DNA of 63,971 nt, counting the filler, from Octopus bimaculoides (Eukaryota), in NCBI RefSeq assembly GCF_001194135.2. It is 6 parts of 6 records of this genome, joined end to end, with 100 filler letters (N's around TTAATTAATTAA, not from the genome) between each part and the next. Parts side by side here need not be neighbours in the genome. Positions count along the whole stretch, not along the records: positions 21,455 to 52,553 come from NC_068992.1; 5 more parts are not named here. One strand, 5' to 3'. Positions 8,046 through 52,553 of the stretch are shown piece after piece. Each line of letters opens with the position of its first letter. Position 1 is the stretch's first letter. The position numbers and the translations under genes are program-made. The notes beneath the pieces are model-generated. The model made no database searches, had not been told where the DNA came from, and saw nothing but the letters and a program-made list of their open reading frames with translations.

Positions 8046-8289
8046 TAATAATAATAATAATAATAAAAGTGATATTTGATTCTCTAGAATATTATGCAAA
8101 TGCATATCAATAAAGAGCCATTATTTTAAGCTAACTAAGCTTCTTTACTGGAATTCAGGTCTTGTACATTAATTTCTGGAGCTTACCTAAATACTATTTT
8201 GGCAAACAAGGTAGAAATTCTCTCTAAATATAAATTCATTGAGATTGAATGATACAAATAGGAAATATAGACACAAGAATAGGTCCAGC

Positions 8290-21454: not shown

Positions 21455-23004
21455 CTGTTAATACTTCATATAGAGAATTAACATTGCTTGTTTTCACCTT
21501 TTCAATATCAGTGAAGAATGTCACTGGAAAAGAAGATATAAGGTTTGCCAGATTTGTCTCTCTCACCAAGGTCATCAGCTGTCGAACGCCGACGAAGGGA
21601 AATAACCCTGAAATCCGGATACGTTCGTGCTGCTGGTCGAGGTGAGAGGGATAACTCCCTTGGCAAACAGGACACAGTCGTGTGTCGATAAGCCAGCTGG
21701 AGGAGATGTCCTCCTGGGGCTAAAAGCAACAGTAACATCCACCCCTAGGGGTCAGCCACACTTAAGTGGCAATATACTACACTTTATCGTGCAGTTACTG
21801 TTAATACTTCATATAGAGAATTAACATTTTTCTTATCTTTTTCCTTTAATTCTAAGATTTTAAATATTTTGAATATTTCATATAAATTTACTGGTTAAAT
21901 AAGATAAAAGAAAATTATTTCCTCTTGCATAGCCTTTTGTATATCCTTTTTAACGCAGTTGTAACAAATGCAACGTTTTTGCTCTTGTTTATTTTATTCT
22001 CTATTATTCGTCAACAATATATTTTCGTTAAAGTTCAAACTTAAAAGAATTTATTTCTGTAGCTTCTACTTTATTTTTTTTTTCTTACAATAATTCTAAT
22101 TGTAAATTTTCAAAAGAAGTGGGAAATGTCGATCGTGCTTAAGGAATTTTATAAGATTCTTTTTCCTTTAAGAAGAGTTTTAAAATTAGTTATATAGAAG
22201 AAAAGTTTGGTAATACAAGAGAATAACTTGAAGAAATCAGTGAGTTAAGCATGTGAAAACTATACGGAAACATAAAGTAGTTGCAAATGGGTCTACAGTG
22301 GCATTATTTGAGCATAATGCAGGAAAGGGTAGTGAGCTGGTAGAATCGTTAAAGGAGTTGAAAAAATTGCTTTGCACTATATTTTATGATTCTTCGTGTT
22401 CTGCGTTCAAATTCCACCGAGGTCAACATTGCCTTTCATCCTTCCAGAGTTGATGATATAATGGACTTTATCAAGTACAAAGGTCGATATAATCGATTAA
22501 TGCCTTCTTTTCACCAATTGCTGGCCTTGTACCAAAATCAGAAACCATTCTTTTAACACAATGCTTGGAAGGCCTTGGATTAACGGATTCGTTAGAGTAT
22601 TGGTTAAAATACCTTGTGGCATTTAATCGCAGCCCATTATGTTCAGAATTCAAATCACTCTGAGATCCCATTTAACATTCATCCTTTGGAATTTATGAAT
22701 ATAATTGCCTCTTTCCCTCCACCCGCAAAAGATGTTACTTTAGGTCTATATTAGACATCTTATATCTAATATCTTTTACTCGTTTCAGTTATTAGACTGC
22801 GGCCATGCTGGGTTACCGTCTTGAAGAACTTATTTTTTAAGCTTGGTATTTACTCTATCGATTTCTTGCCGAACCGCTAGATTACTGGGGCATAAACATA
22901 CCAACACCACAAATAAAGTATATTCTTTTTCTCTTTTTAATTTAGAGTAAATTTTGATCGGTCACCTACTTGGTAGCAAGGTTGTGAAGGGAAGCATCTT
23001 ATTT

Positions 23005-26008: not shown

Positions 26009-26026
26009 NNNNNNNNNNGCACACAC

Positions 26027-28937: not shown

Positions 28938-31024
28938 NNNNNNNNNNNNNNNNNNNNNNNNNNNNNNNNNNNNNNNNNNNNNNNNNNNNNNNNNNNNNNN
29001 NNNNNNNNNNNNNNNNNNNNNNNNNNNNNNNNNNNNNNNNNNNNNNNNNNNNNNNNNNNNNNNNNNNNNNNNNNNNNNNNNNNNNNNNNNNNNNNNNNNN
29101 NNNNNNNNNNNNNNNNNNNNNNNNNNNNNNNNNNNNNNNNNNNNNNNNNNNNNNNNNNNNNNNNNNNNNNNNNNNNNNNNNNNNNNNNNNNNNNNNNNNN
29201 NNNNNNNNNNNNNNNNNNNNNNNNNNNNNNNNNNNNNNNNNNNNNNNNNNNNNNNNNNNNNNNNNNNNNNNNNNNNNNNNNNNNCCACCACTGACTGACA
29301 CCCAGTGTTGGTATGTTTACATCCCCCTAACTCAGAAACCAATTGAATAAGTGCCCGGTTTTAAAAAACAGAAAACAATACTGGGGGTCAATTTGTTCAA
29401 CTAAAAATTCTTCAAGGCAGTACCCCAGAATGGCCACAGTCTAATTACTGAAGCAAGTAAAAAGATTAAAAAAAAAAACAGAAAATAAATAAATTTGCAA
29501 ACAGCAGCTTAAAACAAAATATTTTCAGATTCAATAATAATATAAATAGTGTTGATCTGTTTCTTTCAAATAACCACCAATACCAGCCTGCTATTACATG
29601 TGATCAGAAAAACAGTTCAAAGGCTTATATGCAGAAATTTAAGATAAGGAAAAAAGTGATTTAATTTATGTTATGCAAGTTGCTTTAAATGGACGTTTTT
29701 TTTTTATTTTATCAGGAGGAAAAAAGTCACCACATGGCCACAAAATTGACTAGAGTTAACAGTCAAATTTCCCTCAAACAACACCTTCACATCATAAAAA
29801 ATGGGGCACATTACTAAATGATAGAGTCCAGTGTACAGTATTCATACAAATAAGAGATGGTAGAGTTTAAATGCTTTTGGTCATTGGTCTGCTCTATCAA
29901 CCCCAGCTGGCAACTCAACAACATCTTATATAACCTTTAGGCTCAAAGGCGATGTTGGAGTGAGCTTTCTTCTAGCTTCATTAAATACCATCAGAAAAAG
30001 CAATTCAATGAAATGAGAGCCACATATTGAGTACTACAACTAAAATTTCAAAGAAAATTACGTATTTTAAATTACTACATGTGAAATTACTACATGTGAA
30101 AGGGGAAAAAACCCTAAGCACATGGCTAAGCTTTACAGGACACAGTTAAGAAGTTTGCTTTGCAATCATGAGGTTTAAGGTTCAATCTTAGCACTGGGCA
30201 GTGGGAATGGAGCAACTTTTACCATATTCTCACATCAACACAAACTTTTGAGTGAAATTGAGTTGATGGAAACTGTGAGGAAGCCTGTTAGATTGTGTAT
30301 GTAATTTAAAGATCCAGCTTAATCACAATTACCTCATTAAGTCTACCTTAACAGTAAATACCAATTCAACAGATAGGTAGTTCATTTGATCAAATAAACG
30401 AAATAACCATTGGCAATAACCAATGAAGATCTATTATATTGCATATAGTTCACTGAAAAAGTCAGAATAAGACCAAAACATGTCCTGAATTATCTTATAT
30501 ATGCCAGAGAAAAGAATAATCATTTTCTTTTCTCACCCCATATTTAAACTGAATTAACTCTAAGATTTCGTATATTAAATGTTTTAACTAACCTATCTAT
30601 CAGTATTATACATTTATGCTATACTAATAACTGCTAGTAACTAAGTAGCTAAGGCATAAGCCCAACAATTTTGGAGGGTGAAGGTTAGTCACTACCAACA
30701 ACCCAGCACTTAACTAGTGTTGTATTTTATTGACCCTGGAGGGATGAAAGGCGAAGTTAACCTCAGCAGGATTTGAACTCTGAATGCAAAGAACCACAAC
30801 AATACTGCAAGCATTTTTTCCAATGCTCTAACAATTCTGCCAGCTCACCACCTTAATGTTGCAGAAGGATACATATAGTCCCCTTATTATTTATATATTA
30901 GGAGAGGGTTTGATAGATTAAAACAACCCCAGAATATATAATGCAAACTTCAAACAGATAAAAGATCAAGTCATGGCAGGAACTGAATACAAGCAACTGA
31001 AGATTGACAACATATGGTTTAGAC

Positions 31025-31264: not shown

Positions 31265-31522
31265 NNNNNNNNNNNNNNNNNNNNNNNNNNNNNNNNNNNN
31301 NNNNNNNNNNNNNNNNNNNNNNNNNNNNNNNNNNNNNNNNNNNNNNNNNNNNNNNNNNNNNNNNNNNNNNNNNNNNNNNNNNNNNNNNNNNNNNNNNNNN
31401 NNNNGGATTTCAGAAATTTACTTTCATTTTTTTTTCTCTTTTTCATCACCGAGGTGTTTGAGACGTAAAAGATTTTACATAAAACTAGGATAAAAACTAA
31501 AGAGTTTTAATTTAAATATGAA

Positions 31523-31835
31523 GGTGTGGCTGTGTGGTAAGAAGTTCGCTTCCTAACCACATGGTTCCAGGTTCAATCCTACTACATGGCACCTAGGGAA
31601 CATGTTTTCTACAATAGTTTCAGGCCAGCCAAAGCCTTGAATGGATTTGGGAGATGGAAACTGAAAGAAGCCCCCCCCCCCAACACTGCTTGACAACCAG
31701 TGCTGGCATTTTTACATCCCCATAACTTAAGTAGCAGGTTTTAAAAAAAGTACTGGCGTCAATTCACTCAACTAAAACTCTTTAAGGCAGTGCCCCAGCA
31801 TGGCCAGTCTAATGACTGAAACAAGTCAGAGATAA
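31523..31835 (+). mobile_element. SINE family A, older copy
   Basis: Same head and body as 9513. Further copies or fragments at about 4690-4830, 22775-22910 (-), 29285-29465, 34195-34545, 35093-35280 and 36760-36910. Confidence 0.8.
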
Positions 31836-34800
31836 ATTTATAAATGCGCACTTTTAAATCCAAGAACAGGCAATATTCTCAGTCAGATTGTTGATATTGA
31901 AACAGTTAAACTGAGAATCAAACCCAGTTTCTGCCCCGTTTACAAGGAGCTTATCTTTTGATCTATAGTATGTATGACTATGTATGTATGTATGTATGTA
32001 TGTATGTATGTATAAATATATGCCTGTATGCACATAGATCTTTCATTGGGACTGAAATTGTAAGTTTGTCTTGCAACTCAAGCCACTGCTGTCTTCAAGC
32101 AAAACTGTTACAACTTGGTTTTTCTGATGGTGTATCTAGGTATATATGTATGTATGTATATCCATTGGTATGTGTGTCTATGGTTCTAGAACAAAGCCTC
32201 TGTAAGTCATCAGATGCAAGTACTAGACCATGCACACAAACCAATTGATATATACATACACCACCAGTACCAAGTTGTAATAGTTTTATCTAATGATCTC
32301 AGTGGTGTGAAACTCAAGTTGCAAGAAAAACTCTCAGTTCCAGTTTCAATAAAAAAAAAAAAAAAACATATCCTCTGCGACAGGTATTGAGCACTCCTCT
32401 CATGTATTCAACATAAACAACACATACACACATATATATTGTATTGATGGGGTGCAGCCTATTGAATAAACTCCAGTATTATAAAGGTACTGATATTAAC
32501 TACAATGTTTGCATAAATAACAAGAGCTCCATTGCAGGAATTTGTATTAAAAAATCAAAGGCACGAAATGAATTACTCTGTTGCTCTACCATTTTTACCA
32601 TCTTACTGCTTTGGATAATATTGTTATTTAAAAGAAATGAAGGTGAATGTATACTTGAAATATTTTTATAATTTTCAAAGTTATTTCTAATTTAATTATA
32701 TTCATAATAATCAAATTTTAAACGAGTAGAGAAATTGAAGTTGCTGCCTTTTTTGTAATGTAATAGCTTCTTAAAATTAATGCATCACTTCAGGAAAAAG
32801 TAAAAAAAAAAAAAAATCTTTTTAAAAGAGGGAAAAATTTTAAACATTTTTCTCAAATATTCACATTATGCAAAAAGAAGGAAAGAAGGAAGGAAGGAAG
32901 GAAGGAAGGAAATGATTTTAAAATAAATCAATGTAGGTATTTTTCAGGCCAGAATAAAGAAAAAAAATTATTCTAACTTTTTAGCATTTAAACTGGTCAT
33001 ATCCAATCAAAATATTCTGTTTCATGTTCGAACAGGCCAGACCCAGCCTCACACACCTACCCTACAATATCACTCTAAAAATAAACAATCACACCATTGA
33101 AATCTTGAAGTTACAAGATAAAGATTACATTTGACAGAGTAACCTGAATGCTAAAGAGTTAAACCACTTTTGATATAGCAATTAATAATTCATGACGTCT
33201 AAATATATATTAAAAGGAATAATTTCAAAACACTGATTATATAACAATTCTTTGGTCGAGATGAAATGTTCCAAGTTGATTGTTAATGAAGACAAGTAAA
33301 GTGAAATATGTCTGTACAGCTGCCAAAAAGTGGACTTAGATATTTATAATCATCACTCTTATTTATTTCTGTCAATATTTATTTACCTTTCTCATTAATA
33401 AAAAAAAAAATTTAATTACAAAATACAGCTTATTTTACAATTAGAAATAATTAATGTTATGAAGTTAAAACAAAAAATTCACTAAATACAATTGTTGTTT
33501 TTTTAATTATTCACTTTCCAAAAGTACCATATTTTCAACTCATTAAGCCTCAAATTTTGACACTCTATCAACAACCTAGAGCCTAACAGGGTTTACAAAA
33601 TACTGGCTAAATGTCTGGGACATTTATATTTTCCATGGAAAAAAGGGCACCTTATAAGCAGTCAAACATGGTAACTGTTATAAGAATAATAATAATAATA
33701 ATAACAACGAGCATGTTGATAGTGCTCAGGTGCACCAAAACTTACTTGCTTTGATTTTTTTTTTTTTGTTTCTTGTTTTTAATAAACAGTTTTTCAGGTA
33801 TTTTACAACCGTTGAGCTCACATTTCTCAAGAAATGAAAATATTGCAATATACAACTTCTCATGTAGAATATCCCAATTGGAGTTTATATCGGTGACATA
33901 GCATGTGGTGAAATATGTGTAATAAAATTAATTGTACCCAACTATACAAAAATCTGATACCATACTGTGTTCATGACACATCTTTGAGTTAGAAAACCTA
34001 CACAAAAAGAAATGTCTTACAATTTCAAAACAAAAAGATTGTTTTTAATGTATGGAAAAGAAATAGTAAATTATGAGAGTAAAAAAGAGACAGCTTTAAT
34101 GAAGAACTCTATGCATGCATGCATATATATATATACATATATATATATTATATCACTTACAAAACTTACATTTTTATAACAAAAAGATATATATGCGTTC
34201 TGTGGTAAGAACTTTGTTTCCCAACCACATGGTTTCAGGTTCAGTCCCACTGCGTGGCACCTTGGGCAAGTGTGTTCTACTATAGCCCAAGGCTGACCAA
34301 AGCCTTTGGAATGGATTCGGTAGACAGAAACTGGAAGAAGCCCATAATATGCATGTGTTTGTGTGCCCCCCACCACCACCACTGCTTGACAACTGGTGTT
34401 GCTTTGTTTATGTCCCTGTAACTCAGCAGTTCACCAAAACAGAGTGACAGACTAAGTACCAGGCTTATAAAAAATAAAAATAAGTATTGGGATTGATTCA
34501 CTCAACTAAAAATTCTTAAAGGTGAGGCCCCAGCATGAAACAAATAACAGATATAAGACACAATAAATACATTTTAAAATTCTTAAAGGTGAGGCCCCAG
34601 CATGAAACAAATAACAGATATAAGACACAATAAATACATTTTAAAACTCATGCAAATTTATCGATACTACCAACATTATTATTACAAAGTTCTTGTATAT
34701 TCACAATGTATTTTTACATATAATAATTATTATCATTATTATTATTATTATTACTACTATAATTGTAGCTTTAGAATTCTGAAGTGATGGGACAAAATAA

Positions 34801-35476: not shown

Positions 35477-35900
35477 GGCACGGGAGTGGCTGTGTGGTAA
35501 GTAGCTTGCTTACCAACCACATGGTTCTGGGTTCAGTCCCACTGCGTGGCACCTTGGGCAAGTGTCTTCTACTATAGCTTCAGGCCAACCAAAGCCTTGC
35601 AAGTATATTTGGTAGGCAGAAACTGAAAGAAGCCCGTCGTATATATATATATATATATATATAATGTATGTATGTGTATATGTTTGTGTGTCTGTGTTTG
35701 TCCCCCCAACATCGCTTGACAACCGATGCTGGTGTGTTTACATCCCCGTAACTTAGCGGTTCAGCAAAAGAGACCGATACAATAAGTACTAGGCTTCCAA
35801 AGAATAAATCCTGGGGTCGATGAGCTCGACTAAAGGCGATGCTCCAGCATGGCCACAGTCAAATGACTGAAACAAGTAAAAGAGTAAAAGAGAAAGAGTA
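35477..35900 (+). mobile_element. SINE family A, complete young copy
   Basis: Colinear with 9513-9916; (AAAGAGT)n-like tail. Confidence 0.9.
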
Positions 35901-37823: not shown

Positions 37824-37825
37824 AT

Positions 37826-38345
37826 CTTTTATTTGTTACTTGTTTCAGTCATTGGACTGCAACCATGCTATGGCACTCCCTTGAAGGGTTTAGTCCAGTG
37901 GTTCTCAACCTGGGGTCTGTAGACCCCTGGTGATCCATGAAGGTAGTACTGGGAGTCCATGAACAGAACTCAAAATTCGATGTATATATATATACACACA
38001 CATAAGGATAAGTATATTAAAAGGGGTTCATGAAAAAACTCATTTAAATAAAAGGGTTGAGAACCATTGTTGGGAACCACTGGTTTGGTCAAACAAATTA
38101 ACCCCAGTACTAATTTTTTAAGCCTGATACTTATTCTATCAGTCTCTTGAGAACCAACACTCGTTCTCAAATAGTGATGAGGGACACACGCACACACACA
38201 CACACCAAACATCTATACAATGAGATTCTTTCAGTTTCTGTCTACCAATGTTACTGACAAGGCTTTAATTGGCCCAGGGCTATAGCAGATGCACTTGCCC
38301 AAGATGCCATGCAGTAGGGCTAAACCCAGAAGAACCATGTAGTTG
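37826..38345 (-). mobile_element. SINE family A, old copy interrupted by a hAT MITE
   Basis: Family A 3' end at 37826-37895 continues at 38083-38345. Confidence 0.8.
37896..38082. mobile_element. hAT (Charlie-like) MITE with 8-bp TSD and doubled right end
   Basis: Left TIR CAGTGGTTCTCAACC; right ends GGTTGAGAACCATTG (38055-38069) and TTGGGAACCACTG (38070-38082). TSD GTTTAGTC / GTTTGGTC. Confidence 0.85.
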
Positions 38346-40541
38346 GGAAATGAAAATATAAAGAAGCATAAGAAATTAAAATGCATATCTTATAACTGTA
38401 GTAGAAATTAAGAAGTATAAAGTAGCCTTTAATAAAGATTTCAATGTGAGCTCAAATATTTTAGTGGCATACTTCAGTAAGGTAGAGCTTCAGATTGGCT
38501 CTCTGAAATGAAAAGTAAAATGTATAAAATGCCAGCTGGTGTGTATGAACTAGTGTATGAGGTTATTTCCATTGTAAATTACATAAAGGCTCAGTCATGA
38601 AGAGTAACAATACAGATTTGTTAGCAATTTGAAAAAAAAGGAAAGGCAAGAAAAACTGGGGTTTTCTTTTTTTTTTTTTTCTTTTCAAGTTATTTTTCAA
38701 AATTTATTTTTGTCAATATTATTTACACTCCTTTCTTCCAAAAGCTGCTTTCCTTAACCAAACCATCACCGACATTACCAGGCTTATCAGTTAATCACTT
38801 ACATTTATTTATTTAATAAAGCATTAACTATTAATTAAGAAATGGAGATTTTATTCCATACTTGCCCCATGATTACAAGACTGAATGTCTACATTTAATA
38901 TAAGAACATAAATAAATAAATGAAACAGTTTCTATTTTCAGAAAAATAACGAAATGTGAAATAGCACCAGAATATTAAAGAACTGAAGAGAGGTATCATT
39001 TAAAGACAATGGTTATAGCAAGTAACAATATGGAATGAATCGAAGTAAAATATCATTTTCTTTCATTTGTGTTTAGGTGTGTGTGTGTGTGTGTGTCTAT
39101 AATTTGCATGAAATGGTAAAGTACAGTAAGAAAGAATAACAAAAATATAAAATATAAAACATAGCAGTAGAAACTAAAAATAAATCTATACTGGTGAGTG
39201 TGTCAACAGTTTAAAGTCAATTCTTTAAATGTTATGAGATTTTGGCTTTTTTTCTTTCTTATTCTTTAAGAATCAGTTGATTGAAGGAATTGGTTTTGTA
39301 AAAAGAAGAGAGAATTAAATATAAAGATGACTTAAATAGTAAGGGATTGAAGATATAATGAAGAATATACAATGATAAATGGCTTTAAATGTGTATATGT
39401 CTGTCTATGCTTATTTATTTTTACAACATATATANNNNNNNNNNNNNNNNNNNNNNNNNNNNNNNNNNNNNNNNNNNNNNNNNNNNNNNNNNNNNNNNNN
39501 NNNNNNNNNNNNNNNNNNNNNNNNNNNNNNNNNNNNNNNNNNNNNNNNNNNNNNNNNNNNNNNNNNNNNNNNNNNNNNNNNNNNNNNNNNNNNNNNNNNN
39601 NNNNNNNNNNNNNNNNNNNNNNNNNNNNNNNNNNNNNNNNNNNNNNNNNNNNNNNNNNNNNNNNNNNNNNNNNNNNNNNNNNNNNNNNNNNNNNNNNNNN
39701 NNNNNNNNNNNNNNNNNNNNNNNNNNNNNNNNNNNNNNNNNNNNNNNNNNNNNNNNNNNNNNNNNNNNNNNNNNNNNNNNNNNNNNNNNNNNNNNNNNNN
39801 NNNNNNNNNNNNNNNNNNNNNNNNNNNNNNNNNNNNNNNNNNNNNNNNNNNNNNNNNNNNNNNNNNNNNNNNNNNNNNNNNNNNNNNNNNNNNNNNNNNN
39901 NNNNNNNNNNNNNNNNNNNNNNNNNNNNNNNNNNNNNNNNNNNNNNNNNNNNNNNNNNNNNNNNNNNNNNNNNNNNNNNNNNNNNNNNNNNNNNNNNNNN
40001 NNNNNNNNNNNNNNNNNNNNNNNNNNNNNNNNNNNNNNNNNNNNNNNNNNNNNNNNNNNNNNNNNNNNNNNNNNNNNNNNNNNNNNNNNNNNNNNNNNNN
40101 NNNNNNNNNNNNNNNNNNNNNNNNNNNNNNNNNNNNNNNNNNNNNNNNNNNNNNNNNNNNNNNNNNNNNNNNNNNNNNNNNNNNNNNNNNNNNNNNNNNN
40201 NNNNNNNNNNNNNNNNNNNNNNNNNNNNNNNNNNNNNNNNNNNNNNNNNNNNNNNNNNNNNNNNNNNNNNNNNNNNNNNNNNNNNNNNNNNNNNNNNNNN
40301 NNNNNNNNNNNNNNNNNNNNNNNNNNNNNNNNNNNNNNATATATATATATATATATATACATGCATATATATTTTCATAATATAATCTATTAAATGATAT
40401 ATTTGTGAAAATATAAAATAATCAAAATGCATATTTCATAATTGTAGTAAAAATTAAGAAGAATAAAGTGGCCTTTAGTATTAAATTTTATGTGAGCTCC
40501 AATGTTATAAAAAAGATTTAAACCTGGGTTTCTTTTTATTC

Positions 40542-42014: not shown

Positions 42015-42263
42015 TCAGACTGAGTCAAAATGAAGTTCTCCAGATCTGAAAGAAATGACTTGTTTGAAAGTGTAACGTGTGACTTCATAGTAACCAGGGC
42101 AATAGGTAGAATTTTGTGAAGCTAAACTAAGAGTGGATGCTGTACTGGAAGTATGTTGCAAAGCCTGAGATTCGGCTCCAGAGTTAGCTAATTTACGATA
42201 TTCCAACAAGTTCTTCCAGATTTTATTACGATGTCCGGTACCGATTCTCATACTTTGGAGATC
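42015..42263 (-). CDS. TP63: p53/p63/p73-family protein, terminal coding exon (end of SAM plus TID/HOMO-like motif)
   Basis: Acceptor ttttgcttcttttctag|GAT at 42263. Encodes DLQSMRIGTGHRNKIWKNLLEYRKLANSGAESQALQHTSSTASTLSLASQNSTYCPGYYEVTRYTFKQVISFRSGELHFDSV, stop TGA at 42017-42015. In frame with the SAM exon. Confidence 0.95.
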   Translation of the reverse strand, partial: DLQSMRIGTGHRNKIWKNLLEYRKLANSGAESQALQHTSSTASTLSLASQNSTYCPGYYEVTRYTFKQVISFRSGELHFDSV

Positions 42264-43050
42264 CTAGAAAAGAAGCAAAATTCAAGAAATAAATTTTCAG
42301 TCAAATGAAAAATTTTTTTCAAGCTAACATTGATTTTTACAAATTTAAGAAACTATATTTTATTGGGGCAAATAATTTTAGTGCACTTTTGGAATAAGAG
42401 TGAAACTAGTTGTTCACTAGGCTAACTAGTGCATAGGGAATACCAGGCTTTACTTTTAAATGCAATACACATATGTAAAGACTGAAGTAATGACAATGTG
42501 ATCAATGCAGCTGATGTCCTAGCAAATATTTTTCAGTGAATATCTCTGCACTGAAGATGTTAACTGTTTATATTTATTTACGTTTGATAACCAAACTGAA
42601 AATGGCTTCCTTCATCTCATATAAATACATAATTATATATATATATGTACCAATTAAAATGTTTTTGATTGAATAATGGTCACAACTTAAAACCTATTCA
42701 ATACCATTATAGGATTCTGCTCTTAAACTGTGGTGTGTAATTCAATTTGCCTATGTAAACCTCATTAAAAAGAACAGCTTTTTTCACATCCTTGCTTGCA
42801 TGAATAAGGTGGTTTCTGAAAACTACTCACACAGTTAGATAACTGTTGTATTATTAACCAGTCAGGTGGGTAATTTTGAGAGAAAAGTAGTCAAGTATCT
42901 TTTTTAAAAAATGCTAGTTAATAAGATCATAATGATCACCAAAATTTTTGTTTGTTGGGACTCTTAAAGGAGTGTTGCAAAATCATGGTTATATGAAACC
43001 AGTAACCTTCAATATATCTAAGCAGTACTGACAAAGAGAGCAAAGATATA

Positions 43051-43269
43051 CTCTTTACTCTTTTACTTGTTTCAGTCATTTAACTGTGGCCATGCTGGAG
43101 CACCACCTTTAGTCGAGAAAATCGACCCCAGGACTTATTCTTTGGAAGCCTAGTACTTATTCTATCGGTCTCTTTTTGCCGAACCGCTAAGTTACGGGGA
43201 CATAAACACACCAGCATCGGTTGTCAAGTGATGGTGGGGGGACAAACACAGACACACAAACACACATAC

Positions 43270-43310
<41 letters not shown>

Positions 43311-43337
43311 CATATATACGACGGGCTTCTTTCAGAG
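43051..43337 (-). mobile_element. SINE family A, 5'-truncated young copy in the last p53-family intron
   Basis: Reverse complement of the 3' two-thirds of the 9513 copy. Confidence 0.9.
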
Positions 43338-43661
43338 TTTTATCAAACCTACTATATATTTCCAAGTACAATATTACTAAGACTTATTTTGCTATCTATA
43401 CTACTATGGCTGTACCAGTAATACACTGGGCTCTATGGATTTGTTATATGGATTCTAGTCACAAATACATACATAAAATGAAAAGCCTACAGGTGACCTC
43501 ATTAATAAAAAAGTAATGAGATTCAGATCCAATTAACTCAAGAAAACAAGTGATATAGAAAATTAAACATGTATTTAATTGCAATGATATAACAAACATT
43601 TTTAAATTCCTCATCCTCATTAGTTTCCTAATTTTCCACGTTGGCATTAAGTGGAGAGGTT

Positions 43662-43876
43662 TTAACCCTTTTGATACCAACCCAGCTGAAACTGCCTCTG
43701 GCTCTGTAGTACAAATGTCTTGCTTTCAAAAGTTCTAAATTAAAATCTTCCACCAAACCTTTGTCACAATTTATGTTCCTAACACTAGCTTATTTTACTA
43801 AATTCTTTGTTATATTTAAAAGTAATTGAAAGAAACATAGAGCATCTCAACAGAAATACCGCAACAAAAAGTTTAA
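43662..43876. mobile_element. Second piggyBac-like MITE family
   Basis: TTAACCCTTTTGATACC...GCAACAAAAAGTTTAA: degenerate TIR between TTAA sites. Confidence 0.6.
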
Positions 43877-44462
43877 ATATAGTTATCTTCTACATTTGAG
43901 CCCATAATGCTCTCAGCATCAGTACACCCTTCTGTGGACTCTGTTGATTCCGTTGGCCACATTTAGAAAATTTTCAACCACATTGTTTTGCTTGAGGCTT
44001 AGGCATTAATCATCCTGATTAGATGTTCTTCCTATTATCAACTGCTACAACACAGAGCAGATAAGTTTATTGTAAATCAACACTCAGTAAATTCTATTAT
44101 AAAACTCAGAGATTTTGGAGTGGGTTTTTTTTCTACTCTTTATCAGCTTCAGTCCCTACAAGTGAAATGAAACAAAACAGATCCAGCAGCATGAGTTAAA
44201 ATGAATTTCTGGGCCAAGAGCGATTTACAATTTCAGCTTTCATAAATGAGATGATGAAGCAGGCTAAGTGTGTTTATTGAAGACCCCCCAACACTTTCGC
44301 TATCTAAGTTGAAGATATTCTGAAAATATTTCCTGAACTAAACTGCTGCAAGCAAGACAAAGTGATATAAACTGATGCATTCAAGAAAACTGATCAGCTG
44401 TCATTAACTGAAAAAAAAAAAATATCAACAAGAAATATAAAGTACATTGTACAAAATCTTAC

Positions 44463-44556
44463 CTCAAGTGAAAAATCATCCAGCTGGAACATATTATGTA
44501 AACCTTTCTGATGAAAATTATCGATATATGCCTGTAATCCGATTTTCGTTAACCAC
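44463..44556 (-). CDS. TP63: p53/p63/p73-family protein, SAM-domain exon (94 nt, phase 2-0)
   Basis: Acceptor tctctgtag|G at 44556, donor GAG|gtaaga at 44463. Encodes WLTKIGLQAYIDNFHQKGLHNMFQLDDFSLE, a recognisable SAM fold start equivalent to p63/p73 exon 13. Confidence 0.95.
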
Positions 44557-44761
44557 CTACAGAGATTTTGAGATATCAGTTTACATGCAACCACTTTATT
44601 GTGAGAGATACAAGCAAAAGAAAAAAAAGATAGTTTTAAACTTCTGACAATATCCCTAGTACTTCATGACCGTAACTTCACAACTCTGTATTTATTCAGC
44701 TGTTGCACCCTATCACATTCATATTTAATGTTTTAAGTGTATATTCACTAAGAATGACAGA

Positions 44762-44980
44762 TTAACCCTTTAATGTTTGCATTATTCTGCCAAAATTAAT
44801 GCTTTTTCATCCACATTGTTTTAAACTAATCATACATTATCTTGTAGCTATGAGATTTTGATGAGGTAGCTGTTAATTTTTAAAACGATATTGTAGGGTT
44901 GTTGTGAGAGACCAGATTTGGCCAGTTTGAACATAAAACAAGCAGAATACTTTTGGCCGGTTTAAATACTAAAGGGTTAA
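44762..44980. mobile_element. piggyBac-like MITE (TTAA-CCCTTTA...TAAAGGG-TTAA)
   Basis: TTAA at both ends with CCC/GGG termini. Related copies at about 4945-5141 and, inverted, about 32975-33162. Confidence 0.75.
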
Positions 44981-45311
44981 ACTTATCCACATACACTTAT
45001 AGATGGAGCCATTTAACTTAATGATATACATTCTTTTCACAACCCTAGTTCACATTATTTCTTTGTATCAATTATGGCCCAACCAAATCAACAAAATTTG
45101 TACAAAAATTAATGTTTAAAGACAAATTTAACCTTAAGCAACACAGTTAATGCAGTAGATAATATAGAGGTTCAAGACCCTCTTTGTTCCTGGTGTCTTG
45201 CAATCATGGCATCACACTTAGCTTTCTAAACAGACTCTAACAATGTTGTGTAGCTAACTTTATCCTTTACCTTTTACTTGTTTCAGTAATCAGACTGTGT
45301 CCATGAATCAC

Positions 45312-45500
45312 AGGTTTAAGGTTAACCCTGATGGAACAGACCTATGATCAAAGACGTTCCAAACACGACCACCCTATCGGTCCTTTAGGCATAGTATGTC
45401 TTGGCCCACCTTATCCTTTTTAAGCTGGTAGGATGATTAAACAGATTTGACGAGTATTTCTAGCATGACAACTAACCACACAAAGGCTTTCTTATCGGCA
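45312..45500. repeat. Unclassified dispersed repeat family E
   Basis: GTTTAA...CCCTGAT..A.CAGACCTATGATCAAAG motif. Relatives at about 2040-2090, 14527-14730, 29715-29925, 49460-49530 and 52215-52270, in both orientations. Confidence 0.55.
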
Positions 45501-46127
45501 TGCTGTTATACATAGTCTGCTTCTGAGGTAAAATCATTCTAAACAGGTGAGATGGAATTGAAGCTTTCACTATATCAAGCGGGTAAGAAACATCTCCAGG
45601 TATGTGTCCATACATGAATTTGAATCTTGCAAAGAACACCTTTTCATATCTAGTTATAGTAGCTTATCCTTATTGTTACGAAGCTCATCTTATTAGTTCA
45701 TCTAACAAAACACAGTTTAGCTCTCTCTCTCTCTCTCTCTCTCACACTCTTTGTGGCCTTGACTAGTTACCAGAGACGCTAATGCTCGCTTAAATTGTCA
45801 AAATTCATCAACCAGGCAAATTGACAGTCAGAATGCAATAATTCTAATATTACAGTGTATCATTCAAGAAAACACAAGTCATGCTACAAAATAGCAACGA
45901 TTTGCTTCATTTCAAGAAGTGAATATTGCCAACAATAGGTTAATATCAATCTTACTACAGTCATTGTGGTTTATGGCAGTAGCCATTTCTGATCATCCGA
46001 AACTAAAACTACTGTCCTAGAAACACCCACTGTGATCAGAAATCCACCCATTGAGTTTTTACAAAATTATTCTACCAGGCAAAAAAAAAACAAAAAAAAA
46101 ACATACATTTTAAATGAATTTACTTAC

Positions 46128-46340
46128 TGTTCTATACTATTTTCAGCAGGTTCTCGTTTTGTAATTGGAGGGTCATCATCATGAGTAGGCTGTTGCCCAT
46201 TCACCATTTGACTGTTCCCATTTTGGGTACTATTTACTTGGTTACTATCTGGAGAGAATGCTAAAGTAGACTGGCGGCTGCTATCCTGAGACTGAGAACT
46301 ACTGTAACTTGTACTTGGTAATGTTGATGTACGACCAGAT
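46128..46340 (-). CDS. TP63: p53/p63/p73-family protein, internal exon encoding the Ser/Gln-rich linker between oligomerization and SAM domains (213 nt, phase 2-2)
   Basis: Acceptor ttcttcttgtttcag|A at 46340, donor CA|gtaagt at 46128. Encodes SGRTSTLPSTSYSSSQSQDSSRQSTLAFSPDSNQVNSTQNGNSQMVNGQQPTHDDDPPITKREPAENSIEQ, colinear with the squid (Loligo) p53-family linker as I recall it. Joins the SAM exon in frame (CA|G TGG = QW). The symbol is a stand-in: molluscs have one p53/63/73 gene. Confidence 0.9.
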
Positions 46341-46409
46341 CTGAAACAAGAAGAAACTGCAACAATAACCAAAGCCAATAGCAAGCAGTCATCCTTTTAT
46401 CTCTGTAGC

Positions 46410-48003
46410 TATAATAATCCTTTCTTATATAGGTGCAAGGCTTCAAATTTTGGAGGAGGAAACAGTCAATTATATTGACCTCAGTACATGACTGGTACTT
46501 ATTTTATTGGCCCTGGAAGGGTGAAAAACAATTTGACGTCGGTGGAATTTGAACTTATAAGATAAAGGGCTGAAAAAATACTGCAAGGTTATTTTAGTGA
46601 ATTCTCTACCGATTTTGCTAATCTGATAATATGAGGGGATGCTGAAAAGTTCCTGATTTTAAGGGTATCGTGAAAGGCCTGGTTGGAGGCTTCCAAGTAC
46701 TTTTACAGGGCTAAGAAAAACTGGAGGATTGCTGCAATAAGTGTGTGAATCTGAGAGGGGAATATGTTGAATAAAATCATAATTAACTGATCCTCTTGTA
46801 TTCTCTTTTACCCAAAGCCAGGAACCGTTCAGCACCTCCTCATACAAGACCCATAATCTAGGGAAGAGGAACAGTCAAATACATAGACACCATTACTGGA
46901 CTGGTACTTTATTTCACTGGCCCAGGAGGGTGAAAGGAAAAGTTGATTTTGATGGGATTTGAACTCAAAACATAAAGACAACAAATACCACAAGGCATTG
47001 TATCTGACACTTTAATGATTTTGCTAAATAAGAATATTCCAGTGGTGCAATGTTACAAACTCAGATTAAGCCAAATCCTTAACTGGTGCTTATTTTTATC
47101 AACCCCAGATATATGAATTACACGGTTGAGCTAAATGTGATTTGAACTGAGATTGTAAAGAGATGCAACTAAATACCAAGAAACATTTATATCAATATTC
47201 TATCAATTCTACATTTCCAGAACTTTCTCAATAATAATGGTTTACTACATTAGCACCATGCTACAGATTTAAAGGAGAACAATATATTCAGTCATACCAT
47301 TGATGCTTTGTTCATGAAGCACCACAGCAGGATTTGAACCTGGAACAAAGACAAAACTAAAAGCTAATCAGCATTTAATACCATTTCTGCAACACTACAC
47401 CACTTTTATAATGGTTTCAGAATTAGGTACAAAGCCAGAAATTTTGTGGAGAGGGAACAGTCAATCATGGTAACTTTAATATTTGAATGGTATTTATTTT
47501 GTTGACTCCAGAAGAATTAACTATAAAATCAACCTCAAGAGTAAACCTAGAAGATAAAAGGCTGAAGAAGAAATAATATTTGTTTCAAATTTTGGCATAA
47601 AGTCAACAATCTTATGGGAAAAGCGCTTGTTAATTACATTGACCTCAGTATTTGACTGGTACTATATTTCATCAACCACAAAAGGATGAAAGGTAAAGTT
47701 AACTTCAGCTGGATTTGAACTCAGAACATAAAGAAAAAAATGCCACTATGCATTTTGTCCAATGCTTTAACAATTTTGCCAGCTCATCACCTTAATAACA
47801 GTAATAATTTTTTTCTAATCTTGACATAAGGTCAGCAATTTTGAGGGGAGGGAGTAAGCTGGTTACATTGACTTGTCTTCCAACTGGTACTTATTTTATC
47901 AGCCATAGAAGGATGAAAGGCAAACACTCAACCTTGGCAGAATTTGAACGCAGAATGTAAAGAGCCAGAAGAAATGTCACTACACATTTTGTCCAACATG
48001 CTA

Positions 48004-48034
<31 letters not shown>

Positions 48035-48335
48035 GTTTCAAATGTCGGCACATGTCCAGCAATTGGGGAAGGGGGCTAATCAAATAATAATAATTGTTTG
48101 AAATTTTGGCACAAAGTCAGCAATTTTTGTGAGGTGGGTGTGATTTAGAAAGGACTAGCTGCTAACAACTTAAATTACCTCAACGCCAGTATTTAACTGG
48201 TATTTTATTTGATCAACCCCAAAAGGATGAAATGCAAAGTTAACCTCAGCAGGATTTGAACTCGCATTAAGAAATGAAAGTAATGCAGCTAAATATTTTT
48301 GGCTGACACACTAATGATTCTGCCAGCTCACCATA
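46410..48335 (-). repeat. Second co-oriented pile-up of SINE family B (about 8-10 copies)
   Basis: TTTGAAC B-box remnants near 46550, 46960, 47140, 47335, 47715, 47945 and 48260, with family B bodies and (AAT)n spacers. One copy hosts the mariner MITE. Confidence 0.8.
46630..46844 (+). mobile_element. Non-autonomous mariner deletion derivative (MITE)
   Basis: About 31-bp imperfect TIRs (TATGAGGGGATGCTGAAAAGTTCCTGATTTT / AAAGCCAGGAACCGTTCAGCACCTCCTCATA) with TA at both ends. The interior keeps the transposase C-terminus (CNKCVNLRGEYVE*). Confidence 0.85.
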
Positions 48336-50744
48336 ATAACAATAATTGCATATAAAACATTATATAAGATGCAGAAACTACTTGTAAATAAACCTACTTG
48401 CTCAATCTATATTTAACGTTTTATGATCCTCATCAAATCTGCACCTGTAGGGAAACGTCTTGAATAGATTTTGTCGTTTAATTTCAACAAAAATTATTCA
48501 GAAAATAGCAGTGCCTATCATCCATTCTGGACTGGGTTGGATACTAAATGTTATTTTCATACCATGATTTCACAGTGATGTCCAGAAATTTGGACACGGT
48601 ATCCATCAACAAACCTTCACAGTATTTGAGGAGGGTTATATGTGTATTTCGAAGATGTATTTGCTAGGAAAGTGACTGGTTGTTAAAGTGAGGTTTCAGT
48701 CATTGTACCTTCAACCTTTTTTCAGATGCCTGTCATATTCAGAAATGTTCCTGAAATTTATTAAATCCATAAGAGTAAATTGTTCTCATCCTGCTATTTA
48801 TCCCAGGGATAAACTTCCCTCATGGATTTAATAAAGTGATTGGTTTTAAATTCTGAGAACATTTTCAAATATGACAGGCTCCTTGAAGAAGGCATGAGAA
48901 ACATTGTAAGTCTAACATACAAGATGAAGATCATTGACCAACACTATCAGTGTATAATAATAATAATTCCACATTTAAGAAATTCAAACAAAATGTGTGT
49001 GTGTACATATGGCTATACCTATGCCTACACTGATCTAACAAAATAAAGAAAATGTTATGTTGTGTCCTGGGTCAATGTGATCAGTTAAACCATCGAATTG
49101 GTGTCACAGCATGGCTGCAGTCCAATAAGTAAAGCCAGCTGATTGTAATTCATTAGTCTTTAACGCTATTATAACATCATTAAATTTTTATGCTTCTAAA
49201 GAAATTAATTCAATTACTTTGTCATTTAAGAAATTAGCTTCAGTATTTTACAACTACAAACAATCCTTTAATTTCATAACATTAGTAAATTATTTTGTAG
49301 ATATTATTGTCACAACTTGTAGGTGCCAGCTTGCATTCCATATCAATGGCAGAGTACCTACATGGTTGTTTGAGCTATTAGAAACAGCACACAAATCTTC
49401 CTCAATTCACATTCTAAACCTGCATATAAAACAGGAAGAATGCTTTGGATAATGTTGTCTTAGATATGTTGTGTCTGAAAAAAAGATGAGCTGATACCAG
49501 CTGAAACATCTTTGATCATAGTTCTGTGACATTCTAAAAAGTTAAATTTACTTCCATCACTCTATAAATTGTTTCTCAATCAGCTGGTTCTTCATCCAAT
49601 AGCACCTACAGAACCTCATAGAAAGATGCAGTTATAACAGATCAGCTTATGCTGTTATACCATGAAAAATTAAACTTGAAATGGATGATGATCTTGAAAT
49701 AGATTAAGTAATAGAAAATGAATTTAATAAAGTATATTGATTTTATATATGTGTGTATATATATAGTCCAAAATTAATGATGGTCTGAATTACCAAAATT
49801 CATTTAATAAAGTTTGCCAACTTGTATAGACCTGTATACTCATAAATGATTTGAATACTGTAGTTTCAATAAAGCCCTTCTTCAGAGAGAAAGAGATTTA
49901 AACTTAATACATGGGCTATTATAAACAGTTTGAAAACCTCCTTCTGAGGAGTTGATGGGCAACGTCATTGATTATGTTTGTCCATGATGTGAAATTATCC
50001 AAATGGCATCAGATCTCAATTACAATCATTCAAAATACAGACAAGACCACTGTTTATCTCCGAGTTATTTAACCATATTAAACTGCTTCAAATAATGTAT
50101 ATGACGTTAAATGATGATGATGAATTATGTATATTCAAATATTCAATAATATTCAAATTTTATTCAAATATTATTTGAATTATAATTATTAATCAAATAT
50201 AAAAAATATATTCAGATAATGTATTCAAATATTCAATAATATATTCAAATAATATGAATTTTGTTTTTTTAAGTATATTTTCATACCAGCATTTTTGTGC
50301 ATATATCACCATTTTAACATCCACTTGTCCATTCTTGCATGGCTCTGACAAAGTTTATTGAGGCAGATTTCCAATAGCCAGATGCCCTTCCTGTCACCAA
50401 TCCTCATGTTTCCAGGCAAAGTAACATTGCTCCAAAGTGAGACGTTGTCGCAGAATATTGGATATGACACAGCTAATGAAAGTGACACTCAAGTTAGAAA
50501 TAATCAGCCAAATCTTGCTACAATCATACATTCTCCAGCAGCAGATCATTTATACCTAATAGAAATAGTCAACAACTTTTTCTCAAATGACACCCTGTTG
50601 TCTCATGTATATATGTATGCATGTATGTCTGAGCCTACAGTAGACTTTCTATATGGTAGCTAGATACAACAAAAATAGTAGCCAAATATCTCTCAACTCA
50701 CACATAGTAACATCAAGTATAGACACACAGTAGTAACACTAATG

Positions 50745-51650
50745 TACATGGGTTGGCTGAAAAGTTTATAGGCTGACCAAGATACCCTCATGGAATATGA
50801 CCAAATAAGGTTTATTTCTCAACATAGTCCCCTTGTCGTCCACACACTTCTTCCATCAATGTTGCAGTGCTTGGATTCCATTAATGAAGCAGCTTTCGTC
50901 CTGCCAGTCAAAAGTGTCATCAACAGCAGATATGACATCATCACTGCAATACTGGTTCCCAAGTGTTTGTTCATATTGGGGAACAGATGATAGTTAACAG
51001 GGCCAAATCAAGAGAATAGGGAGGGTGATCAACTAGTTTAAAGCCACAGTCATGCACAACAGCCATCAAAATCAAGGATTTGTGTGCTGTCCTCATGAAA
51101 CAAAACCTTTTTGTCAGTTTGTCCTCATGAAACAAAAACCTTTTTGTCAGTTTTCCAGGACATTTGCTCTTGATAACCTTTAGTAACTGCCTCAGCAAGT
51201 TGACATAGTACTTACTCTCCATTAATGATCCAACCCTTCTGAAGATAATTAATAGATACAATGCCTTTTGCAGTCCAAAAAACTAAGGCCATCACCTTCC
51301 CTGCAGATGAAACGACCTTGGCTTTCTCTGGAGCAGGTGAGGAGTGTTTCTACTACATGGATTGTCTCATTGTCTCTGGTTCAAAGTAAAGAACCTAACA
51401 TTCATCCTGGCTTAGGAAATGTTCAAGGAAATCAGCTGAATCTGCCTCAAACGATGTTAGATTTTCCCAGGATGTGATCAGCCTAGTGCACTTTGGATCA
51501 GGTGTCAGAAGATGTGACAACCACTGAGCAGAAGCCTTTGTCATGCCAAGTTCATTGTGCAGAAAATTCAAAACTCTTCCACAGGATATGCTGATAGCAT
51601 TGGCTATTTGATTGTCATCCATCACCATGTGCTGAAGAGGTGAATACATG
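50745..51650 (-). mobile_element. Mariner (DD34D, Himar1/irritans-like) transposon fossil, 5'-truncated
   Basis: Terminus TA-CATGGGTTGGCTGAAAAGTT at 50745. Broken transposase with motifs LTPD..TRL, QDEC, AGKVMA.VFW.AKGI, YYVNLLRQL..IKSK.PGKLTK and VHDCGFKLVDHPPYSLDLA. Many stops and frameshifts; internal 32-33 bp tandem duplication at about 51088-51152. Confidence 0.9.
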
Positions 51651-52511
51651 GCTTTCCCCATCTGGGAAAAGAGAGGGAGAGATGTGAGGTCAAAGTATAT
51701 GGTGAATATGAAAAAGAGAAACAGGATACAGGAACAGAAAAGGTGCATTGGTAGGTAAGTGTGTAAGAGTGAAATTACTGTGATGGAAAATTAGTGATAG
51801 GAAAAGAGTTGGACACAGTGAAAAATAGTTTGCAGGACACACCCATGCATTAACTTTAAATCCATTTTTCCATGCTAGCATGAATTAGGTGAATACATAT
51901 CTACAACCAGATGTCCTTCATGTTGCTAATGTGTGTGTATGTGTGTGTGTGTGGATACTTATATAGGTGAAATGTAACAAAGTTATTGCATTATGAAACA
52001 CAGCTTCTAAGTAACCATAGAAAAAGGATCAAACATCTATGCTTAGTAGAATAACTATATTTTTACGTTCATATATTAAACAAGTTAATTGAGGAGAAAA
52101 CAAGTATTTGTTCAACAGTGTAATTAATTATTGCTCTTTTCACATGTAAAAAGAAAAATACACCAGTGACAAATTAATCAACTGAAATATATTTTATCAT
52201 TTCTAAATAGATGATTGTTTAGCTCCAAATCATCCTCAATCAAGTAGACTTTATGATCAAAGACAATCTAGAGTTTAAGAGGTTCAATTCAAATCAGTAA
52301 AATTGCCAAGAAACTGAAAACACATAACACTTTAAATTGTATGGTTGCTTTTATTAATTTATATCTTTATTAATTATTGATGCAAATATTTTATAACTGG
52401 TTATGTGGAAGTTTGCTTCCCTCTCATTAGTAATTAAGTTAAATCCCAGCAGATCTGGGCTAATCAAAGCCTTGTGAGTGGATTTAGTTGATGGAATCTG
52501 AAAGTCCATCA

Positions 52512-52553
<42 letters not shown>

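What the first reader, a model, noticed from the sequence alone, without database searches (positions are those of the whole stretch)
42248..46128. Octopus p53-family gene has the exon geometry needed for a p63/p73 beta isoform
Seen: the SAM exon is 94 nt, phase 2 to 0. Skipping it joins GAA CA to G ATC TCC AAA GTA TGA, giving a SAM-less protein ending ...SIEQISKV* with the stop at 42250-42248, inside the last exon and so not an obvious NMD target. Established: human p63-beta and p73-beta arise by skipping the 94-nt exon 13 and end after four frameshifted residues (p63 ..RIWQV*, p73 ..RTWGP*, from memory). Exon size, phases and stop position match here. Inference: the alpha/beta switch, or at least the capacity for it, may predate the protostome-deuterostome split. 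I do not recall a beta isoform reported for cephalopods. Caveat: the out-of-frame stop could be a by-product of the conserved (M/L)-(R/K) codons.
Basis: partly seen in the sequence, partly recalled or inferred. Interest (0 to 1): 0.78.

Follow-up and report, generated by a model that had tools for sequence, protein, structure and literature searches.

The report
Conserved p63-type SAM exon in mollusc gene
The 3' end of this mollusc (probably octopus) p53/p63/p73-family gene has the same 94-base skippable exon as human p63 and p73. That layout is an old feature shared with limpets, a tube worm, carp and a monkey, and nothing here shows that the short "beta" protein is actually made.

Summary
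On the minus strand an upstream exon ends GAA CA|gtaagt at 46128. A 94-nt exon (44556-44463, phase 2 to 0) encodes the first 31 residues of a p63/p73-type SAM domain. The last exon starts at 42263. Skipping the 94-nt exon gives ...SIEQISKV* with TGA at 42250-42248.

The layout is not special to octopus. I found exactly 94 nt, the same phases and an early shifted-frame stop in Patella, two unnamed molluscs, the annelid Lamellibrachia, carp tp63 (..RTCPG*) and tamarin TP73 (..RTWGP*). So the capacity for a beta-type skip does predate the protostome-deuterostome split, as a consequence of conserved intron positions.

The stop comes from the conserved residue pair M/L-K/R. ATG followed by AAR must contain TGA. 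It persists in two loci that have lost the downstream intron and cannot skip. For the octopus M-R pair, synonymous recoding still gives a stop this early in about 30% of trials.

No cephalopod sequence was reachable, so use of the skip junction is untested. No invertebrate beta isoform turned up in the papers I could search. In bivalves the SAM-less isoforms are attributed to poly(A)-site choice.

Verdict: real but ordinary anatomy. The isoform hypothesis remains open and is cheap to test.

The parts
46128..46340 (-). Upstream coding exon, the equivalent of vertebrate exon 12. It is 213 nt, S/Q-rich, and ends GAA CA|gtaagt in phase 2.
   Evidence: It is homologous to the upstream exons of two unnamed molluscs (L001, L011) by tblastn and has the same start phase.
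44557..46127 (-). Intron 1, 1571 nt. It begins gtaagt, so the reading frame continues CA|G TAA. There is an in-frame stop at 46126-46124 if the intron is retained.
44463..44556 (-). The 94-nt 'SAM exon', the equivalent of vertebrate exon 13. It is phase 2 to 0 and encodes (Q)WLTKIGLQAYIDNFHQKGLHNMFQLDDFSLE, the first 31 residues of the SAM domain.
   Evidence: Pfam SAM_2 and SAM_1 match. The best solved-structure match is the human TP63 SAM domain, aligned without gaps. The same 94-nt exon is present in 6 other loci.
42264..44462 (-). Intron 2, 2199 nt, donor GAG|gtaaga, acceptor ttgcttcttttctag|G. It contains a dispersed SINE-like repeat (43040-43260) and a TA/TG microsatellite.
42015..42263 (-). 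Coding part of the last exon. It carries the rest of the SAM domain (DLQSMRIGTGHRNKIWKNLLEYRKL), the tail, and the alpha stop TGA at 42017-42015.
42246..42251 (-). Codons ATG AGA (Met-Arg). They contain the shifted-frame TGA at 42250-42248 that would end a skip product ...SIEQISKV*.
   Evidence: The same codon pair gives the stop in L001, L003, L004, L014, L015 and L016.
42048..42104 (-). YCPGYYEVTRYTFKQVISF. This motif aligns with the core of the vertebrate p63/p73 transactivation-inhibitory domain (RVIDAVRFTLRQTISF). A skip product would lose it together with the SAM domain.
   Evidence: Alignment A1; coordinates

Best explanation
The region is the 3' end of a molluscan p53/p63/p73-family gene, probably from an octopus. 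Its default product is an alpha-type protein with a SAM domain and an inhibitory-domain-like tail.

The 94-nt, phase 2-to-0 penultimate exon is inherited from the bilaterian ancestor. Both flanking introns sit at exactly the positions of vertebrate p63/p73 introns 12 and 13, and the exon encodes 31 structured SAM residues that tolerate no insertions or deletions.

The shifted-frame TGA five codons into the last exon is a side effect of the conserved Met/Leu-Lys/Arg pair. It is not a feature selected for a beta isoform.

Skipping the exon would mechanically give a protein lacking SAM and the inhibitory-like motif. By analogy with p63-beta and p73-beta, that protein would be a constitutively open, more active tetramer (inference). 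The sequence only permits this. It does not show that it happens.
For: Shown by tool results:
- Exact coordinates, phases and skip product in the window.
- SAM identity, with human TP63 SAM as the best solved-structure match, aligned without gaps.
- A 94-nt exon with the same phases in Patella caerulea L007, unnamed molluscs L001 and L011, the annelid Lamellibrachia satsuma L014, tamarin TP73 L015 and carp tp63 L016. Every locus has an early shifted-frame stop. The tails are I*, RTSRK*, RISRK*, RTCRR*, RTWGP* and RTCPG*.
- In Patella, tamarin and carp, genes with Pfam P53 (and in Patella P53_tetramer) domains lie directly upstream.
- Among 134 related ORFs the critical pair is M-K in 44, M-R in 12, M-N in 1 and M-Q in 2 invertebrate-type sequences. 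It is L-K in 58, M-K in 3 and L-E in 3 vertebrate-type sequences. For M-K and M-N the TGA is unavoidable.
- Loci L008 and L009 lack the downstream intron yet keep ATG AAA, and so keep the TGA.
- Recoding simulation gives P(stop this early) of 0.28-0.33.
- The first codons of the last exon vary synonymously between species (GAT/GAC; CTC/TTA/CTG/TTG), so there is no sign of dual-frame constraint.

From the literature:
- Beta isoforms arise from exon-13 skipping (PMC12304987, PMC5995411, PMC9091270).
- Intron positions in the DNA-binding and oligomerisation exons are conserved from sea anemone to human (PMC1964547).
Against: - The three intron-bearing species with M-R (window, L003, L004/L011) all use AGA, while the only intron-less M-R locus (L017) uses CGG. 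That pattern would also fit selection to keep the stop where skipping is possible. It is confounded by GC content (0.31-0.34 against 0.49) and by the relatedness of two of the species.
- The acceptor of the octopus SAM exon has a weaker pyrimidine tract than the last exon's acceptor (0.61 against 0.78), as expected for a skippable exon. The same holds in Patella and weakly in unnamed mollusc A, but not in the other loci.
- No transcript data were available, so real use of the skip cannot be excluded.
Confidence: 0.78

Rival explanations
1. A regulated beta-type isoform is really made in octopus by skipping the 94-nt exon. In this reading the alpha/beta switch is an ancestral bilaterian mechanism for releasing a p53-family factor from inhibition by its SAM domain and inhibitory domain.
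For: - The layout is complete and conserved across Mollusca, Annelida and Vertebrata.
- The octopus alpha tail carries an inhibitory-domain-like motif that the skip would remove.
- The SAM exon has the weaker acceptor in octopus.
- AGA is used at M-R in all three intron-bearing M-R species.
- In vertebrates the beta forms are expressed and functionally distinct (PMC9091270, PMC12304987, 10.1101/2024.12.03.626646).
Against: - No skip-junction transcript or beta-type protein was found for any invertebrate. The databases reachable here held only genomic ORFs.
- The stop is forced by conserved residues and persists in two loci without the intron.
- The would-be beta tails are not conserved in length or sequence, ranging from 1 to 5 residues.
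- At least one invertebrate lineage lost the intron, and with it the capacity to skip.
- A lamprey p63 study based on 5' RACE found no beta-like form (PMC4743058).
Confidence: 0.2
2. Octopus does make SAM-less isoforms, but by another route, as reported for bivalves. The route would be an alternative 3' exon or intronic polyadenylation upstream of, or within, this region. The 94-nt exon itself would be constitutive.
For: - In molluscs one gene encodes both p53-like (SAM-less) and p63/73-like proteins (Kelley 2001, as cited in PMC10564563).
- Muttray 2007, by its title as cited in PMC10564563, describes polyadenylation-site choice variants.
- My recollection is that Stifanic 2009 classed molluscan short forms as gamma-like. 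I did not read that paper here.
- In the window the upstream exon's donor is followed at once by an in-frame TAA (CA|G TAA). The same 'AG|G TAA' occurs in L001, L011 and L014. Retention or intronic polyadenylation would therefore give ...ENSIEQ*.
Against: - No canonical AATAAA or ATTAAA lies in the first ~1350 nt of intron 1. The first hit is at 44774.
- The region where a gamma-type exon would lie, upstream of the exon-12 equivalent, is mostly outside the piece.
- No transcript data were available.
Confidence: 0.35
3. Skipping occurs only as low-level splicing noise. The product is tolerated because it ends in the last exon, but it has no function.
For: - Short internal exons are commonly skipped at low frequency (general knowledge).
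- There is no conservation of the beta tail and no dual-coding constraint.
- Loss of the intron is tolerated in one lineage.
Against: - In vertebrates the same skip gives abundant, functional isoforms (PMC9091270).
- Noise and function cannot be told apart without expression data.
Confidence: 0.4

Closest known systems
Vertebrate TP63 exon 13 / p63-beta
   Same: - It is a 94-nt penultimate exon, phase 2 to 0, encoding the first 31 SAM residues. This was verified on carp tp63 DNA and by gap-free alignment to human p63 SAM.
- Skipping shifts the frame into a TGA made by the (L/M)(K/R) codons five codons into the last exon.
- SAM and the inhibitory domain are lost.
   Different: - In vertebrates the skip is documented, and the beta protein is expressed and functionally distinct (PMC12304987, 10.1101/2024.12.03.626646). 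Here it is only possible.
- The octopus tail would be ISKV after an unchanged Q. Human has five new residues, RIWQV.
- According to PMC7531772, lophotrochozoan genes are co-orthologues of p53, p63 and p73 together, not p63 orthologues.
Vertebrate TP73 exon 13 / p73-beta
   Same: The 94-nt exon and the stop position are the same. Tamarin TP73 gives ..DPSLV-RTWGP*.
   Different: As for p63. In addition, some p73 sequences have L-E at the critical pair, where the TGA cannot form. So the stop position is not universal even in vertebrates.
Bivalve p53-like and p63/73-like isoforms (Mya arenaria, Mytilus)
   Same: One molluscan gene produces proteins with and without the SAM domain (PMC10564563 citing Kelley 2001 and Muttray 2007).
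   Different: The short forms are attributed to poly(A)-site or alternative 3'-end choice, not to skipping of the 94-nt exon. I did not read the primary papers here.
Nematostella nvp63
   Same: The p53-family gene structure is deeply conserved. Five introns in the DNA-binding and oligomerisation exons sit at positions identical to the human genes, and a putative inhibitory domain is present (PMC1964547).
   Different: That paper does not address the SAM-region introns or a beta-type skip.

Membership tests
p53/p63/p73 family, alpha-type C-terminus | A SAM domain most similar to the p63/p73 SAM domain | tested here: met
   Pfam SAM_2 at 3.4e-11 and SAM_1 at 1.2e-9. The top solved-structure hits are human TP63 SAM (2y9t, 1rg6), with p73 SAM also hit.
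p53/p63/p73 family, alpha-type C-terminus | A post-SAM motif resembling the transactivation-inhibitory domain | tested here: inconclusive
   YCPGYYEVTRYTFKQVISF aligns with RVIDAVRFTLRQTISF of p63 and p73 in alignment A1. This is sequence resemblance only, with no functional test.
p53/p63/p73 family, alpha-type C-terminus | A p53 DNA-binding domain and an oligomerisation domain encoded upstream in the same gene | not testable with these tools
   No such exons lie at 46341-52553, so they are beyond the edge of the piece. In the orthologous loci of Patella, tamarin and carp, called genes with Pfam P53 (and in Patella P53_tetramer) lie directly upstream.
p63/p73 exon-13 cassette (beta-isoform mechanism) | A 94-nt penultimate exon, phase 2 to 0, at the homologous position | tested here: met
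   plus the gap-free alignment to human p63.
p63/p73 exon-13 cassette (beta-isoform mechanism) | A frameshift stop a few codons into the last exon | tested here: met
   TGA at 42250-42248. It is expected in about 30% of synonymous recodings.
p63/p73 exon-13 cassette (beta-isoform mechanism) | The skip junction is actually present in mRNA | not testable with these tools
   There are no cephalopod sequences in the protein or contig collections. A search with upstream-exon peptides returned only genomic ORFs.
p63/p73 exon-13 cassette (beta-isoform mechanism) | The beta-specific tail is conserved or constrained | tested here: not met
   The tails are ISKV, I, TSRK, ISRK, TCRR, TCPG and TWGP. Synonymous sites in the first last-exon codons vary freely.

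The most novel reading that the evidence does not exclude
Regulated skipping of the 94-nt SAM exon is an ancestral bilaterian switch. It would convert an auto-inhibited alpha-type p53-family factor into a constitutively active form lacking SAM and the inhibitory domain. Under this reading it still operates in cephalopods and other lophotrochozoans, for example in germ-line quality control.
Probability: 0.15. Interest if true: 0.65.

Novelty: new member of a known kind. Interest (0 to 1): 0.3.

Why it matters
If octopus, limpets or tube worms really use the skip, the alpha/beta isoform logic of p63 and p73 would date to the bilaterian ancestor. That logic releases the protein from inhibition by its SAM domain and inhibitory domain. 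A recent review (PMC9091270) lists as open questions whether TAp63-alpha-type auto-inhibition is conserved in invertebrates and whether the short isoforms have physiological roles. Use of the skip in invertebrates would bear on both.

As it stands, the result is more modest. It shows that the two SAM-region introns and the 94-nt exon are conserved to the nucleotide across molluscs, an annelid and vertebrates. It shows that one invertebrate lineage lost the downstream intron. It also shows that the 'beta stop' needs no special explanation.

Tried and rejected
1. I looked for octopus transcripts or proteins. The alpha C-terminus search gave only 6 hits, none cephalopod. An exact look-up of the 78-aa last-exon ORF found nothing. 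The best identity among 134 relatives was 64%. Junction usage therefore could not be tested.

2. I searched with upstream-exon peptides of five invertebrates, hoping for transcript ORFs ending in a beta tail. Only genomic ORFs ending ...IAR*/...ISR* at the donor came back.

3. I tried to name the anonymous assemblies and runs through the literature (GCA_029979845.1, GCA_013332975.1, and the ERZ and SRR records). There were no hits. The lineage that lost the intron stays unidentified.

4. I used L017, an intron-less locus with M-R, as a codon control. It has ATG CGG and so no TGA. Its genome is GC-rich (0.49), so the result does not separate selection from codon bias.

5. I looked for inverted repeats bracketing the SAM exon that might promote skipping or back-splicing. 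Only TA/TG microsatellite matches came up. The SINE-like copies in the two introns have the same orientation.

6. I considered chance as the sole explanation for the stop. It is rejected as the whole story, because the stop is at the homologous codon pair in all taxa. That in turn is explained by amino-acid conservation.

7. The transposase-like ORFs upstream (50971-51790) had no Pfam match.
Full report
**What is in the window.** I read the minus strand across the finding and rebuilt the exons by script.

| Feature | Coordinates | Notes |
|---|---|---|
| Upstream exon | 46340-46128 | 213 nt; ends ...ATA GAA CA, followed by gtaagt |
| Intron 1 | 46127-44557 | 1571 nt |
| SAM exon | 44556-44463 | exactly 94 nt; acceptor ctctgtag, donor GAG\|gtaaga; phase 2 to 0 |
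| Intron 2 | 44462-42264 | 2199 nt |
| Last exon (coding) | 42263-42015 | acceptor ttttctag; starts GAT CTC CAA AGT ATG AGA ATC; alpha stop at 42017-42015 |

The spliced alpha reading is ...ENSIEQ WLTKIGLQAYIDNFHQKGLHNMFQLDDFSLE DLQSMRIGTGHRNKIWKNLLEYRKL...YCPGYYEVTRYTFKQVISFRSGELHFDSV*. Joining 46128 directly to 42263 gives ...ENSIEQISKV*, with TGA at 42250-42248.

No further p53-family exons are visible at 46341-52553. The piece carries only the last three coding exons.

**Identity.** The spliced C-terminus matches Pfam SAM_2 and SAM_1. Its best solved-structure matches are the human TP63 SAM domain (2y9t, 1rg6), followed by p73 SAM.

The alignment to human p63 has no gaps. Octopus SIEQ|WLTK lies on human SIVS|FLAR, and SLE|DLQSMR lies on SMD|DLASLK. 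Both octopus introns therefore fall at the residues where human exon 13 begins and ends.

In an alignment with molluscan, annelid and human sequences, the molluscan YCPGYYEVTRYTFKHTIS motif (window 42104-42048) lines up with the core of the vertebrate transactivation-inhibitory domain, RVIDAVRFTLRQTISF.

The closest proteins in the 5.8-billion-protein collection are molluscan, for example Patella caerulea KAK6176065. None exceeds 64% identity and none is a cephalopod. I can confirm a lophotrochozoan p53-family gene but not the species.

**Is the layout special?** I recovered genomic DNA for related loci and mapped the splice sites.

| Locus | SAM exon | Skip product |
|---|---|---|
| Window (octopus-like) | 94 nt | ..SIEQ-ISKV* |
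| Patella caerulea L007 | 94 nt | ..SVAG-I* (a TAG even earlier) |
| Unnamed mollusc A, L001 | 94 nt | ..SIA-RTSRK* |
| Unnamed mollusc B, L011 (last exon also in L004) | 94 nt | ..SIS-RISRK* |
| Annelid Lamellibrachia satsuma L014 | 94 nt | ..TIA-RTCRR* |
| Carp tp63 L016 | 94 nt | ..SIS-RTCPG* |
| Tamarin TP73 L015 | 94 nt | ..DPSLV-RTWGP* |

All seven loci have phase 2 to 0. In Patella, tamarin and carp, called genes with Pfam P53 (and in Patella P53_tetramer) domains lie immediately upstream, which confirms orthology.

The p63 pattern is verified on fish DNA and on the human protein alignment.

The layout is thus a shared inheritance of Mollusca, Annelida and Vertebrata. Conservation of p53-family intron positions from sea anemone to human was already reported for the DNA-binding and oligomerisation exons (PMC1964547). 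Conserved intron positions and phases were also reported among the three lamprey paralogues (PMC4743058). So this is an extension, not a surprise.

**Is the stop more than a by-product?** The TGA is formed by the last two bases of the Met/Leu codon and the first base of the next Lys/Arg codon.

Among 134 related ORFs the critical pair is distributed as follows.

| Pair | Invertebrate-type | Vertebrate-type |
|---|---|---|
| M-K | 44 | 3 |
| M-R | 12 | - |
| M-N | 1 | - |
| M-Q | 2 | - |
| L-K | - | 58 |
| L-E | - | 3 |

- With M-K or M-N the TGA is unavoidable. With M-Q or L-E it cannot form.
- There is a natural control. Three loci (L008, L009, L017) have the upstream acceptor but no intron between the SAM exon and the last exon, so skipping is impossible. 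L008 and L009 still read ATG AAA and so keep the TGA. L017 reads ATG CGG, in a GC-rich genome.
- For octopus M-R, I recoded the last exon synonymously under three codon-usage models. A stop falls at or before the observed position in 28-33% of trials, and somewhere in the exon in about 98%.
- The would-be beta tails share nothing beyond what the alpha frame dictates. Their length ranges from one to five residues. The first codons of the last exon vary synonymously between species. So there is no sign of dual-frame constraint.
- That the stop lies in the last exon follows automatically from skipping a penultimate exon.
- The inference 'not an NMD target' rests on the vertebrate exon-junction rule. 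Whether that rule applies in molluscs is not established (general knowledge).

**Small signals the other way.**
- All three intron-bearing M-R species use AGA, while the intron-less one uses CGG.
- The octopus SAM-exon acceptor has a weaker pyrimidine tract than the last-exon acceptor (0.61 against 0.78). Patella is similar (0.50 against 0.72).
- Both signals are weak. They are confounded by base composition and by the relatedness of the species.

**Is the skip used?** I could not test this.
- The collections contain no cephalopod sequence for this gene.
- A search with the upstream-exon peptides of five invertebrates returned only genomic ORFs that stop at the donor (AG|G TAA).
- In the literature I could search, beta isoforms are described only for vertebrates (PMC9091270, PMC5995411, PMC12304987). 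Their five beta-specific residues contribute to activity in those species (10.1101/2024.12.03.626646).
- For molluscs, one gene is said to give both p53-like and p63/73-like proteins (PMC10564563, citing Kelley 2001). A paper cited there describes poly(A)-site choice variants (Muttray 2007). I found no report of a beta-type skip in any invertebrate, and no cephalopod isoform study.

**A rival route is visible in the sequence.** The upstream exon's donor is followed at once by an in-frame TAA (CA|G TAA, 46126-46124). Retention or intronic polyadenylation would therefore give ...ENSIEQ*. However, the first canonical poly(A) hexamer in that intron is about 1350 nt downstream, at 44774.

**Mechanism and verdict.**
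- Shown: the exon layout, its exact conservation, and the origin of the stop.
- Inferred: that a skip product would lack SAM and the inhibitory-like motif and so behave like a constitutively open beta form.
- Untested: that it is made.

The strong claim, an ancient functional switch, remains a hypothesis. I put it at roughly 15-20%. The anatomy is ordinary for this gene family, and the idea is cheap to test with existing RNA-seq.

Noticed in passing
L008 7464-7604; L009 2647-2787; L017 around 8070-8220: An unidentified invertebrate lineage has lost the intron between the 94-nt SAM exon and the last exon while keeping the upstream acceptor. The records are assemblies GCA_029979845.1 and GCA_013332975.1 and an ENA contig. 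A beta-type skip is impossible there.
   Followed up: partly
window 46124-46126 (minus strand): An in-frame TAA lies directly after the upstream exon's donor (CA|G TAA). Intron retention or intronic polyadenylation would also give a SAM-less protein, ...ENSIEQ*. The same AG|G TAA occurs in L001, L011 and L014.
   Followed up: partly
window 43040-43260, with copies at 35683-35888, 34354-34510, 22772-22906, 38084-38148, 31745-31836, 29414-29470, 45265-45305 and 37825-37882: A dispersed SINE-like repeat with at least 8 further full or partial copies in the piece. One lies in each intron flanking the SAM exon, in the same orientation.
   Followed up: partly
window 42048-42104 (minus strand): The C-terminal motif YCPGYYEVTRYTFKQVISF is nearly invariant in the molluscan and annelid sequences recovered. 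It aligns with the vertebrate p63/p73 transactivation-inhibitory domain core. This bears on whether alpha-type auto-inhibition is ancient.
   Followed up: partly
window 26009-26018, 28938-29284, 31265-31404, 39435-40338: Runs of N (scaffold gaps) flanked by TG/CA and TA microsatellites. The piece comes from a gapped draft assembly.
   Followed up: no
window 50971-51261 and 51395-51790 (minus strand): Two adjacent open frames of 96-131 aa looked like a decayed transposase. Neither matched any Pfam family.
   Followed up: partly
L010 and L011, about 3000-6800: The unnamed mollusc B locus carries a long tandem array upstream of its exon-12 equivalent. Its reverse-strand translation repeats RHLHPLTRLDIYTL every 26 nt (spurious tblastn hits).
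   Followed up: no
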